Under the pieces are notes generated by a model. It was given only the letters and a program-made list of their open reading frames with translations, was not told where the DNA came from and ran no database searches. A program made the translations under genes and the position numbers. A stretch of 63,729 nt of DNA, filler included, from Octopus bimaculoides (taxonomy: Eukaryota): assembly GCF_001194135.2 (NCBI RefSeq). It is 9 parts of 8 records of this genome, joined end to end, with 100 filler letters (N's around TTAATTAATTAA, not from the genome) between each part and the next. Parts side by side here need not be neighbours in the genome. Positions count along the whole stretch, not along the records: positions 42,925 to 48,250 come from NW_026334474.1; 8 more parts are not named here. The stretch is one strand, 5' to 3'. Below, one piece after another: positions 44,069 through 46,006 of the stretch. Every line of letters begins with the position of its first letter. The first letter of the stretch is position 1.

Positions 44069-44098
44069 CTACAAATTTATACGGGAGAGTAGAGGTAT
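44069..44098 (-). CDS. Candidate 30-nt phase 1-1 micro-exon: (D)TSTLPYKFV
   Basis: gttttgaatctag|ATACCTCTACTCTCCCGTATAAATTTGTAG|gtaaat: length 3n, open in phase 1. Confidence 0.5.
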   Translation of the reverse strand: MPLLSRINL

Positions 44099-44513
44099 CT
44101 AGATTCAAAACATTATCCATAATTGGAAATCAAAGCAGGGTTTACAAAAGAATATTTGAAGTAAATGTTAAAGTACTGGATCCTACACATCAGATGGTAT
44201 TCTAATTACACCGACATACACCTATCATGATGGGTTAGTTGCTCAGCGTATGCAAGCCATTTGATGCAAGTACAGATATCTAATTATCAGTTCACCAAGT
44301 TGGTTAACAAGACTCGATCAACATTTAATCCAAAAACCTCAGGCATCTATAATCTCCATCATCTCACATCACACTTGTAAGATTATGCAGTACATATAAA
44401 TGAACAGACAATTTCATATTCAATATCTTTATCAGTGAGCAACCACAAGAAACTAACTAATTAAGTATGACTAGCTATATCCTTATCGCTAAAGATATTT
44501 CTATGGATACCAC

Positions 44514-44552
44514 CTGGATTTGAAATGAGAGGATGGTGCATGTATGCAGAAT
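44514..44552 (-). CDS. Candidate 39-nt (or 42-nt) phase 1-1 micro-exon: (D)SAYMHHPLISNP
   Basis: ctctgacatccag|ATTCTGCATACATGCACCATCCTCTCATTTCAAATCCAG|gtg|gtatcc: open in phase 1, with tandem in-frame donors (exon end 44514 or 44511). Both donors are weak. Confidence 0.45.
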
Positions 44553-45029
44553 CTGGATGTCAGAGATATATAATATTTCAAACAGCTAAATCTTGATACA
44601 TATTCTGTAAAATTTGGTCTTGTTGTGTAAGTCAATTATACAGTACATCTCATAAAAATTTTACTATGTTGGCTGGAAAAAGAAAGGTGCCCATCCAAAG
44701 CCTGAACAAATGGGTCTGTGATACTAGATGAGCTATGCAGTTCTTAAATTATAAATGCATATATGTATGTGTGTGAGGATGACTACATGGTAAATCTGAC
44801 TTCCAAATAACGTGTGGATAAAGACCCACTATGCAACAACTTCTGTGTGTTTCTTAAACTATAGCACTGTGCAAAGCAAAGGCTCATGAGTGGATTTGGT
44901 AGATGGAAACAGAATGAAACCAATTATGAATACAAACACTAACACACACACATACATATACACACACAAACACATATATGAAGATGTAAACAGATATATG
45001 AACATGAGTGTGTGTATACACATATATCA

Positions 45030-45300
45030 CAAGTGACCAACCTGACTGACCAGGTTATCAGATGCTGTTAGACATTGCTGGTCACAATGCGCTTTTGCAG
45101 TTTTTTAACTTTCAAATGACACTAACCTGCAACCTAGGCGAGCAGGTCAACATTCAGTCCTGATCGAAAGGGGAACTAGAGCAACGTGAAATGAAGTGTT
45201 TAGCTTAAAAAACACAATACACCACTCCATCAGGGAACTGAACTCACAATCTAGTGATAGTGAGTGCAATAGCCTAACCACTAGGCCATGTACTTTCACA
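45030..45300 (-). mobile_element. tRNA-derived SINE (family F) in the VWA-gene intron
   Basis: Minus strand catggcctagtggttagg (A-box) ... gagttcagttcc (B-box); a related fragment lies at 61505-61582. Confidence 0.72.
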
Positions 45301-45889
45301 CATATCTATTATATGTACACACAAAATAGCATGTATACTAATATGGTGTATGTAGATAGGTGTGTGTGTGTGTGCCCAAGTTTATGTATAATCGATATCC
45401 ACAATACATGACATGTAAAGCAATCTACTTGAAAATCTGATTTTTCATTCCATTTAACAATGTTAAAACATTTTGGGAGTATATGGCTTTATCAACTTCA
45501 ATTCTTGATATACTACCATTCATGACAAATGGTTCACATCAGCAGAGACATGAAAATTATGAAACAAAATATATCAATTTAAATTACACAGCACATCGCA
45601 ACCACAGAATAGGAAAGAGATATAAAGTAACATTTTCATGACCAATAAGTATGTTTCCAGCAGCAATTGCCTCAGGTTTTGGTATCCTGTATAATACAGT
45701 GACATAAAGAATGTAATAAAGTGACATAAAATGTAAGCAACAATAATTCACCATTTTCTGTAGTAAATATTTGCGTCCTGGTTGTGAGCAAAAATCAATA
45801 TGTATCAATGCTTCCTTAGATACATGAAGGTATAAAACATTGACCCATGGACCAAGAGCTATTGGTAATTATGATTAATCAAGCATTAC

Positions 45890-45904
45890 CTCAGTCATGA
45901 CAAT
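45890..45904 (-). CDS. Candidate 15-nt alternative exon carrying an in-frame stop (D-C-H-D-stop)
   Basis: tctttccatcag|ATTGTCATGACTGAG|gtaatg, 63 nt downstream of the 39-nt exon; in phase 1 it reads (G)AT TGT CAT GAC TGA. Confidence 0.4.
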
Positions 45905-45967
45905 CTGATGGAAAGACTTTCACAAGAGCGAAAAGATAGAGAATAAGAATAATATGAAATTTCTTAC

Positions 45968-46006
45968 CAGATGTATTTTGATGTGGAGTCGTCATTTCAG
46001 GCTCCG
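45968..46006 (-). CDS. 39-nt phase 1-1 micro-exon, probably of the VWA gene: (x)EPEMTTPHQNTS
   Basis: Minus strand ttttattttcttgttgctattttccaccttacag|CGGAGCCTGAAATGACGACTCCACATCAAAATACATCTG|gtaaga: long polypyrimidine tract, strong donor, length 3n, open in phase 1, same strand and same assembled piece as the VWA exon. Confidence 0.75.

What the first reader, a model, noticed from the sequence alone, without database searches (positions are those of the whole stretch)
44069..46006. Array of symmetric phase-1 micro-exons downstream of a VWA exon
Seen: three short minus-strand AG...GT-bounded segments (39 nt at 45968-46006, 39/42 nt at 44514-44552, 30 nt at 44069-44098). All have length 3n, all are open in phase 1, and all end in G. 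A possible 6-nt member (AAAATG, 45752-45757) is much weaker. Joined, they read EPEMTTPHQNTS-D-SAYMHHPLISNP-D-TSTLPYKFV, an S/T/P-rich linker. Known: phase 1-1 symmetric exons typify modular extracellular proteins and can be skipped without frameshift. Inference: a combinatorially spliced, variable-length linker in a VWA matrix or adhesion protein, which ab initio annotation would likely miss. Only the first exon has strong splice signals.
Basis: partly seen in the sequence, partly recalled or inferred. Interest (0 to 1): 0.72.

Follow-up and report, generated by a model that had tools for sequence, protein, structure and literature searches.

The report
One real linker micro-exon, not an array
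Of the proposed tiny exons, only the first (39 bases) is real: it is the short proline/threonine-rich spacer exon that alternates with adhesion-domain (VWA) exons in an octopus matrix-protein gene, which is an ordinary gene feature.

Summary
As a set they are not above chance. This strand has 54 AG..GT segments of 3n length (27-60 nt) that are open in phase 1, and 9 of them end in G.

Only 45968-46006 (minus strand) stands out:
- It has the best donor and the third-best acceptor in 4.6 kb.
- None of 1000 simulated sequences reached its score.
- Other cephalopod VWA loci carry clear homologues: 36-39-nt, phase 1-1, Pro/Thr-rich exons with near-identical splice signals. There is exactly one per interval between VWA exons.
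- Spliced mollusc proteins show the matching 13-16-residue linker.

The gene belongs to the mollusc multi-VWA matrix proteins, which resemble collagen VI and matrilins.

A decayed, truncated VWA exon with a stop codon and frameshifts lies 150 nt downstream of the micro-exon (45818-45644). A SINE-like insert follows.

Candidates 2 and 3 have weak acceptors and no homologues in the relatives, and they lie beyond this debris, so they are most likely chance. No splicing data were available, so combinatorial splicing remains untested.

The parts
48052..48250 (-). Fragment of an intact VWA-domain exon (frame from 48249; 66 aa, STDVEVEFHLNRY...NIIFLITD). It is cut by the piece edge at its 5' side and by the N gap at its 3' side.
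   Evidence: It matches Pfam VWA positions 46-112 of 174 (E 6.6e-13). It is 94% identical in nucleotides and protein to the VWA exon of an octopus contig (L001), and 80% identical to O. bimaculoides A0A0L8FYL2. Against L001 it has 8 nt differences in synonymous codon pairs and 4 in non-synonymous ones.
47530..48051 (.). Assembly gap of 522 N. By inference it hides the last ~215 nt of the VWA exon (through ...CPG, phase 1) and ~250 nt of intron.
   Evidence: In L003 the distance from ITD to the point homologous to window 47528 is about 470 nt, which fits the gap. All relatives end the exon at TGT CCx G|gt.
46007..47529 (-). Intron, homologous to the introns of related VWA units. It contains an internal tandem duplication of about 630-655 nt (47455-46876 against 46800-46181).
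   Evidence: Self-blastn gives 63% identity over 635 nt, E 5e-41. Both copies align to L002 and L003 intron sequence.
45968..46006 (-). 39-nt phase 1-1 linker exon encoding (A)EPEMTTPHQNTS(G/x). This is the only credible micro-exon.
   Evidence: Its donor ranks 1 of 350 and its acceptor 3 of 183. No simulation out of 1000 reached its score. Homologues are L001 368-406, L002 1017-1055, L003 450-488 and L006 4741-4776. The acceptor block ATTTTyCACyTTmCAG and the donor TGGTAAGA are nearly invariant among them. The window matches 19 of 20 splice-signal columns that are invariant in three relatives.
45644..45818 (-). Decayed VWA exon (pseudo-exon), corresponding to residues ~100-159 of an intact exon. 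It has an in-frame TGA within 45800-45789 and two 4-nt deletions. The 5' part (~245 nt, including the acceptor and the DxSxS motif) and the 3' end are missing.
   Evidence: blastn to L003 979-1161 gives 65.6% identity, E 2.6e-17; to L001 914-1096, 64%, E 1.5e-13. tblastn matches fall in two different frames. The alignment is and the coordinates.
45752..45757 (-). It is not an exon but part of the GAAAATGGT (E-N-G) codons of the decayed VWA exon.
   Evidence: It sits in ACC AGG ACG CAA ATA TTT ACT ACA GAA AAT GGT GAA (45782-45747), which aligns to TARTQMFTAENGD of intact exons. Its acceptor ranks 62 of 183.
45030..45295 (-). SINE-like insertion with a tRNA-type promoter, flanked by CA/TG/TA microsatellite-like DNA. 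The boundaries are approximate.
   Evidence: There is an A box TGGCCTAGTGG at 45288-45278 and a B-box-like AGTTCAGTTCC at 45244-45234. ARAGORN and Rfam find no tRNA. The element carries the two highest-scoring decoy acceptors in the region.
44514..44552 (-). Judged a chance AG..GT open segment.
   Evidence: Its acceptor scores -1.3 and ranks 36 of 183. Its donor ranks 12 of 350, or 58 for the 42-nt form. It has no homology to any of 14 related loci, and its peptide SAYMHHPLISNP is unlike the family linkers.
44069..44098 (-). Judged a chance AG..GT open segment.
   Evidence: Its acceptor scores -9.8 and ranks 133 of 183. It has no homology to related loci.

Best explanation
The piece is part of a tandem multi-VWA extracellular-matrix gene of an octopus. 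The gene is of the mollusc 'VWA-containing protein' kind, which resembles collagen VI and matrilins.

In this gene family each VWA domain is one ~573-nt phase 1-1 exon that ends ...Cys-Pro-G|gt. Between consecutive VWA exons lies exactly one short phase 1-1 exon of 18-39 nt. It encodes a Pro/Thr-rich spacer. Spliced in, it adds 6-13 flexible, probably O-glycosylated residues between the C-terminal Cys of one domain and the N-terminal Cys of the next.

Window 45968-46006 is such an exon. The intact VWA exon at 48250-48052 most likely splices to it; this is inferred. The VWA exon that once followed it has decayed (45818-45644) and a SINE-like element has been inserted behind it. If the micro-exon is still used, its strong donor must therefore join an exon beyond the piece edge at 42925.

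The other three candidates are chance AG..GT open segments in intronic or degenerate DNA. One of them is a scrap of the dead VWA exon.
For: Shown:
- VWA identity.
- The closest relatives are octopus and cuttlefish VWA exons.
- Micro-exon homologues of the same length and phase, with near-identical splice signals, occur in L001, L002, L003 and L006.
- There is one strong Pro/Thr-rich micro-exon per inter-VWA interval in L005, L006 and L010.
- Spliced mollusc proteins carry the matching linkers, e.g. Plakobranchus ...ALCS-TEAPVITTPRPGP-VSC... and Mya ...CPEKAVTVPVTTPKPKPSC....
- The exon's splice score is unmatched in 1000 simulations.
- Its splice-signal columns are 19/20 conserved, against about 59-65% identity for the adjacent dead VWA exon.
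- The VWA pseudo-exon is demonstrated.
- Candidates 2 and 3 have weak acceptors and no homology.
- The background of 54 phase-1-open segments is.
Against: - No junction reads or spliced transcripts from this species, or from close relatives, could be found. L001 comes from an octopus meta-transcriptome but is unspliced.
- The 3' end and phase of the upstream VWA exon are hidden in the N gap.
- The micro-exon's natural partner, the next VWA exon, is dead, so the micro-exon could be a relic too.
- Its C-terminal half has drifted from the P(S/P)PKPP of L001/L003 to PHQNTS. Its body is only 69% identical to L001's, by a hand count, which is close to the neutral level.
- The splice-site matrices were generic metazoan values written from memory, not trained on cephalopods.
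Confidence: 0.72

Rival explanations
1. Three or four phase 1-1 micro-exons (46006-45968, 45757-45752, 44552-44514, 44098-44069) form a combinatorially spliced, variable-length S/T/P linker.
For: All the segments exist, share phase and end in G. The donors of candidates 2 and 3 are moderately good, ranking 12 and 9 of 350. RefSeq isoforms of a distant multi-domain relative in amphioxus do differ by 8-21-aa T/P-rich cassettes, so the mechanism exists in nature.
Against: - 54 such phase-1-open segments occur by chance on this strand, and 9 of them end in G.
- The acceptors of candidates 2 and 3 score negative.
- Relatives show one micro-exon per interval.
- The related loci contain no homologue of candidates 2 or 3.
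- The 6-nt segment lies within a dead VWA exon.
- Candidates 2 and 3 lie beyond a pseudo-exon and a SINE-like insertion.
Confidence: 0.05
2. The 39-nt exon is itself a relic. It belongs to a repeat unit (micro-exon plus VWA exon) that died, and it is no longer included in mRNA. The live VWA exon is either the last coding exon of the array or splices past the whole region.
For: The partner VWA exon 150 nt downstream is truncated and carries a stop codon and frameshifts. The micro-exon body is about 69% identical to L001's (hand count), near the 64-66% of the dead exon. Four of its last six codons differ from L001/L003 by non-synonymous single-base changes.
Against: Its AG, polypyrimidine tract, GTAAGA donor, 39-nt length and open phase are all intact and score best in the region. 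19 of 20 splice-signal columns are conserved, against about 60-65% for the neighbouring neutral sequence (binomial P about 0.002, computed by hand). An exon with such signals between a live upstream exon and any downstream exon would probably be included anyway.
Confidence: 0.2
3. The 39-nt segment starts a terminal exon. Its donor is not used, and read-through gives ...NTSGKKFHIILILYLFALVKVFPSDCHD*, a stalk plus a hydrophobic membrane anchor.
For: ORF 45891-46067 reads in phase into a hydrophobic stretch of about 17 residues before a stop.
Against: The read-through is not conserved: L001 gives GKTFRMYCFRFCYLV* and L003 gives GKTF*. T-rich intron DNA routinely translates to hydrophobic peptides. 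The donor is the strongest in the region.
Confidence: 0.03

Closest known systems
Mollusc multi-VWA matrix proteins (VWAPs). They are annotated as collagen alpha-n(VI)-like, matrilin-like or cartilage matrix protein-like, e.g. Argopecten XP_069108493/XP_069108494, the Plakobranchus 'collagen alpha-3(VI) chain' and Acanthosepion COL6A.
   Same: They share tandem VWA domains of the same subfamily, 50-70% identical, bracketed by Cys...Cys-Pro. Short Thr/Pro-rich linkers of 9-21 residues lie between domains. The family is expanded in molluscs and found in shell and byssus matrices (PMC5597905).
   Different: Only one and a half repeat units are visible here, so the full architecture of the gene is unknown. 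Octopus members are annotated only as single-exon fragments. No triple-helical collagen part was seen or could be tested.
Vertebrate collagen VI alpha-3 N-terminal VWA array (PDB 9han, 6snk)
   Same: It is the best solved-structure match to the VWA fragment, with 8 domains hit. From my own knowledge, not tested here: each N-domain is encoded by about one ~600-bp in-frame exon, and several of these exons are alternatively skipped.
   Different: From my own knowledge: in vertebrates the linkers are part of the VWA exons rather than separate micro-exons. Whether this octopus gene has a collagenous region is unknown.
Mussel proximal thread matrix protein 1 (PTMP1, PDB 4cn8)
   Same: It is the second-best solved relative and a mollusc secreted protein made of tandem VWA domains.
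   Different: It has two domains only. The match is a distant sequence match (E about 1e-7), and its gene structure was not compared.
Alternatively included T/P-rich linker cassettes in amphioxus LOC144905190 (RefSeq isoforms X1-X9)
   Same: The isoforms differ by 8-21-residue Thr/Pro-rich inserts at domain boundaries.
   Different: Those cassettes sit next to other domain types. The evidence is annotation, not data from this locus, and no isoform data exist for the octopus gene.

Membership tests
VWA domain (Pfam PF00092) | Profile match above the curated cut-off | tested here: met
   49.7 bits against a 23.8-bit cut-off, profile positions 46-112 of 174.
VWA domain (Pfam PF00092) | MIDAS DxSxS motif at the start of the domain | not testable with these tools
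   That part of the exon lies beyond the piece edge (>48250). The closest relatives have DSSTS.
VWA domain (Pfam PF00092) | Conserved central GSTNT and C-terminal-side xxTDG columns | tested here: met
   The window has YGSTNTYGGL and IIFLITD. These fall in columns invariant across 10 family members.
Inter-VWA Pro/Thr-rich phase 1-1 micro-exon (the class defined here from relatives) | AG/GT-bounded, 3n length (18-39 nt), open in phase 1, with a strong polypyrimidine acceptor and a GTAAG donor | tested here: met
   Met for 45968-46006. Not met for 44514-44552 and 44069-44098, whose acceptors score -1.3 and -9.8.
Inter-VWA Pro/Thr-rich phase 1-1 micro-exon (the class defined here from relatives) | Sequence homology to micro-exons of related loci, including their splice signals | tested here: met
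   45968-46006 aligns to L001 368-406, L002 1017-1055, L003 450-488 and L006 4741-4776. Candidates 2 and 3 match nothing in any of the 14 loci.
Inter-VWA Pro/Thr-rich phase 1-1 micro-exon (the class defined here from relatives) | Lies between two functional VWA exons | tested here: inconclusive
   The upstream VWA exon looks intact. The downstream one is a truncated pseudo-exon. Any later exon is outside the piece.
Inter-VWA Pro/Thr-rich phase 1-1 micro-exon (the class defined here from relatives) | Inclusion in mature mRNA (junction reads) | not testable with these tools
   No spliced transcript was found in the protein collections. Exact look-ups of window ORFs found nothing.
Collagen VI proper | Gly-X-Y triple-helical region flanked by VWA domains | not testable with these tools
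   Nothing of the kind lies in the 5.3-kb piece, and the rest of the gene is unseen. The label 'collagen VI-like' rests on VWA similarity only.
tRNA-derived SINE | Internal pol III A and B boxes in a tRNA-like head | tested here: inconclusive
   The A box matches perfectly and the B box only partly. No tRNA fold was detected by ARAGORN or Rfam. No other copies were available for comparison.

The most novel reading that the evidence does not exclude
Across molluscs, from sea slugs to octopuses, multi-VWA matrix genes may be built as a strict alternation of ~573-nt VWA exons and single 18-39-nt Pro/Thr-rich micro-exons, all in phase 1-1. Any VWA-plus-spacer module, or the spacer alone, could then be skipped without a frameshift. 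The octopus members are unannotated as multi-exon genes, so they could generate a hidden repertoire of variable-length adhesion proteins. This locus would also catch the array in the act of losing a unit.
Probability: 0.2. Interest if true: 0.4.

Novelty: new member of a known kind. Interest (0 to 1): 0.22.

Why it matters
The practical value is for annotation. In octopus genomes this VWA family is represented by single-exon fragments that read through into introns. Recognising the VWA-exon / micro-exon alternation, with its conserved ATTTTCCACTTTACAG...TGGTAAGA signals, would allow the full multi-domain matrix proteins to be reconstructed. Biologically it is a routine example of phase-symmetric modular exon architecture with birth and death of repeat units. 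It does not open a new question.

Tried and rejected
- The word-index protein search with the 66-aa VWA fragment found nothing, so I went through the HMMER representative search instead.
- Pfam on the joined micro-exon peptide found nothing.
- Rfam and ARAGORN gave only sub-threshold miRNA-family hits on TG/TA low-complexity DNA and no tRNA.
- Exact look-ups of two spurious window ORFs, meant to find same-species contigs that extend the locus, were not on record.
- A profile search for annotated, spliced multi-VWA octopus proteins returned only single-exon ORFs from cephalopods plus short models from other molluscs. No orthologous long locus could be fetched.
- O. vulgaris CAI9720130 (P0012) turned out to be a different VWA+VWD paralogue.
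- One literature search on micro-exons and phase 1-1 linkers was uninformative, and one call failed on term length.
- I considered read-through of the micro-exon donor into a hydrophobic tail. I rejected it because it is not conserved.
- I considered that the intronic tandem duplication might hide a second micro-exon copy. The duplication stops about 175 nt before the exon, and no second candidate passes the splice filter.

Full report
**The observation**

The four minus-strand segments exist exactly as described: 39 nt at 45968-46006, 39 or 42 nt at 44514/44511-44552, 30 nt at 44069-44098 and 6 nt at 45752-45757. All are AG..GT-bounded, have 3n length, are open at offset 2 and end in G.

The upstream coding segment 48249-48052 translates to STDVEVEFHLNRYSSKLDIVDAIDNIAYVYGSTNTYGGLHTARTQMFTAVNGDRAGVPNIIFLITD. 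It matches Pfam VWA positions 46-112 of 174 at 49.7 bits, against a 23.8-bit cut-off. The best solved relatives are the collagen VI alpha-3 VWA array, mussel PTMP1 and integrin I domains. The exon is cut by the piece edge on one side and by a 522-N gap (47530-48051) on the other, so its end and phase are not visible.

**Is it more than chance?**

As a set, no. The 4605-nt minus strand contains 166 AG..GT segments of 27-60 nt with 3n length. Of these, 54 are open in phase 1 and 9 also end in G.

I scored splice sites with generic metazoan matrices whose values I wrote from memory, so the scores are approximate.
- 45968-46006 has the best donor (1 of 350) and the third-best acceptor (3 of 183). 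The two better acceptors lie inside a SINE-like element.
- The acceptors of candidates 2 and 3 rank 36 and 133 of 183, with negative scores.
- The acceptor of the 6-nt segment ranks 62.

None of 1000 first-order Markov simulations of the region produced a phase-1-open 3n segment with a combined score at or above the observed 11.3. The simulated 95th percentile was 7.3. One candidate is therefore far above chance and the others are not.

**What the gene is**

An HMMER scan of 1.84 billion representative proteins found 1435 VWA relatives. The top ones are long tandem multi-VWA proteins. Named members are mollusc proteins annotated as collagen alpha-4(VI)-like, cartilage matrix protein-like or COL6A, together with proteins from a brachiopod, an annelid and amphioxus.

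The closest single-domain hits are cephalopod:
- Octopus bimaculoides A0A0L8FYL2, 80% identical.
- Two ORFs from Logan-assembled contigs, 94% and 89-91% identical.
- Cuttlefish models.

One of these contigs, L001, comes from run SRR3401912, which a paper describes as an octopus meta-transcriptome (PMC11662614). The window is therefore from an octopod, species undetermined. The O. bimaculoides model is a single VWA exon that reads on into the intron after ...CPG, so the exon chain is indeed missed by annotation.

Against L001, the window's VWA fragment has 8 nucleotide differences in synonymous codon pairs and 4 in non-synonymous ones. That is consistent with a functional exon.

**The 39-nt exon has homologues**

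- In L001, a 39-nt AG..GT segment lies 262 nt upstream of the VWA exon: tttttcactttacag|TAATGCCCGAAATAACGACTCCAAGTCCAAAGCCACCTG|gtaagaca (368-406). It encodes (V)MPEITTPSPKPP(G) in phase 1.
- L003 and L002 have ccactttccag|TAAGGCCAGAATTAACGCCTCCACCTCCAAAGCCACCTG|gtaagac.
- L006, which spans a complete interval between two VWA exons, has a 36-nt version with the same tattttccactttacag acceptor and gtaaga donor.

In a four-way alignment the most conserved blocks are the acceptor (ATTTTyCACyTTmCAG) and the donor (TGGTAAGA). The flanking intron decays quickly, and the exon body varies while keeping its length class and its Pro/Thr codons.

The window matches 19 of the 20 splice-signal columns that are invariant in the three relatives. 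The neighbouring dead exon is only about 59-65% identical to its relatives. By a hand-computed binomial this gives P of about 0.002, although T-rich composition inflates such matches somewhat.

**Family architecture**

I scanned the related loci with the same filter. Every inter-VWA interval has exactly one strong, Pro/Thr-rich, phase 1-1 micro-exon:

| Locus | Micro-exon length |
|---|---|
| L001, L002, L003 | 39 nt |
| L006 | 36 nt |
| L005 | 27, 18 and 18 nt |
| L010 | 18 nt |

VWA exons are about 573 nt. They begin x-(K/R/G)-C... and end ...C-P-G|gt in phase 1.

Spliced protein models from other molluscs show the product...ALCS-TEAPVITTPRPGP-VSCADARIDLVFVLDAS (Plakobranchus)...CPEKAVTVPVTTPKPKPSCGVSS (Mya), and linkers of 9 and 21 residues in Argopecten.

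The mechanism I infer is a flexible, probably O-glycosylated spacer inserted between the disulfide-bracketed VWA modules. Phase symmetry allows modules to be gained, lost or skipped. The spacer role follows from its position and composition. Glycosylation and skipping are inference only.

**What lies downstream**

No intact VWA exon follows the micro-exon in the remaining 3 kb. Instead, 45818-45644 is a decayed VWA exon.
- It is 64-66% identical to L001 914-1096 and L003 979-1161 (E 1.5e-13 and 2.6e-17).
- tblastn matches fall in two frames.
- It has an in-frame TGA where intact exons have GGA, and two 4-nt deletions.
- It has lost its first ~245 nt, including the acceptor and the DxSxS motif, and its 3' end.

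Behind it lies a ~270-nt element with a perfect pol III A box and a partial B box (45288-45234). It is flanked by CA/TG/TA microsatellite-like DNA and is probably a tRNA-derived SINE, although no tRNA fold is detected.

Candidates 2 and 3 lie beyond this debris. They have no homologue in any of the 14 related loci, and their peptides are unlike the family linkers.

**Status of the 39-nt exon**

Homology to the family's linker exon is secure. Present-day use is inferred, not shown.

For use: its signals are intact and the best in the region, the length and phase are preserved, and the upstream VWA exon appears to be under constraint and needs a phase-1 acceptor.

Against use: its partner VWA exon is dead. 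Its body is only 27/39 identical to L001's (my hand count). Its second half has changed from P(S/P)PKPP to PHQNTS by single-base non-synonymous changes.

I put about 0.7 on it being a spliced exon that now joins an exon beyond 42925, and about 0.2 on it being a relic.

Read-through of its donor gives a hydrophobic tail (ORF 45891-46067). This is not conserved in L001 or L003, so I treat it as intron noise.

**Combinatorial splicing**

No spliced transcripts were retrievable for this species or its close relatives. As context, RefSeq isoforms of a distant amphioxus multi-domain relative differ by 8-21-residue Thr/Pro-rich cassettes. Linker-cassette skipping therefore exists, but nothing shows it here.

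**Comparison with known systems**

This is a member of the mollusc VWA-containing matrix proteins, which are expanded in molluscs and lack triple helices in several lineages (PMC5597905). It resembles the collagen VI alpha-3 N-terminal array in being a tandem VWA array. That each domain there is encoded by about one exon is from my own knowledge and was not tested here. Calling this gene 'collagen VI' is not justified, because no collagenous part was seen.

**Verdict**

One ordinary but genuine linker micro-exon was correctly spotted. The proposed array is not supported.

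Noticed in passing
window 46181-47455 (minus): The intron between the VWA exon and the micro-exon contains a tandem duplication of about 630-655 nt (47455-46876 against 46800-46181, 63% identity, E 5e-41). Both copies align to the single-copy intron of related units (L002, L003).
   Followed up: partly
window ~45030-45295 (minus): A SINE-like element with a perfect pol III A box (TGGCCTAGTGG, 45288-45278) and a partial B box (45244-45234), inserted just behind the dead VWA exon. 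It carries the two best-scoring decoy acceptors of the region (45159, 45126). ARAGORN and Rfam see no tRNA.
   Followed up: partly
window 44926-45016, 45346-45374, 43412-43760: TG/CA/TA microsatellite-like stretches give sub-threshold Rfam hits to mir-297, mir-466 and mir-3149 (22-35 bits against gathering scores of 85-100). These are low-complexity artefacts, not miRNA genes.
   Followed up: yes
window 45891-46067 (minus): Reading through the micro-exon's donor in phase gives ...NTSGKKFHIILILYLFALVKVFPSDCHD*, a hydrophobic, transmembrane-like tail. It is not conserved in L001 or L003, so it is probably meaningless.
   Followed up: partly
P0065 (Octopus bimaculoides A0A0L8FYL2); L001-L004: The public O. 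bimaculoides protein model for this family is a single VWA exon plus intron read-through (CPG|TYFSRNITPV...). The multi-exon gene family appears to be fragmented in that annotation.
   Followed up: partly
L001 (Logan SRR3401912 contig, 1-1411): This contig, from an octopus meta-transcriptome, retains both introns around the VWA exon. It is either unspliced nuclear RNA or DNA carry-over. It shows the relative's locus was sampled but says nothing about splicing.
   Followed up: no
P0001, P0236-P0245 (Branchiostoma LOC144905190 isoforms); P0003, P0231-P0233 (Haliotis LOC124110407): The amphioxus isoforms differ by 8-21-aa Thr/Pro-rich linker cassettes. The abalone isoforms differ by 41-42-aa Cys/Arg-rich (EGF-like) repeats and by a terminal VWA domain. 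This is annotation-level evidence for module skipping in the wider family.
   Followed up: partly
L005 6923-6949, 11198-11215, 15298-15315; L010 998-1015: In a more distant cephalopod paralogue group the inter-VWA micro-exons are only 18-27 nt ((x)APIPP, KPEIP, KPIPP, KVTLPPST). Spacer length therefore differs between paralogue groups, while phase 1-1 is kept.
   Followed up: partly
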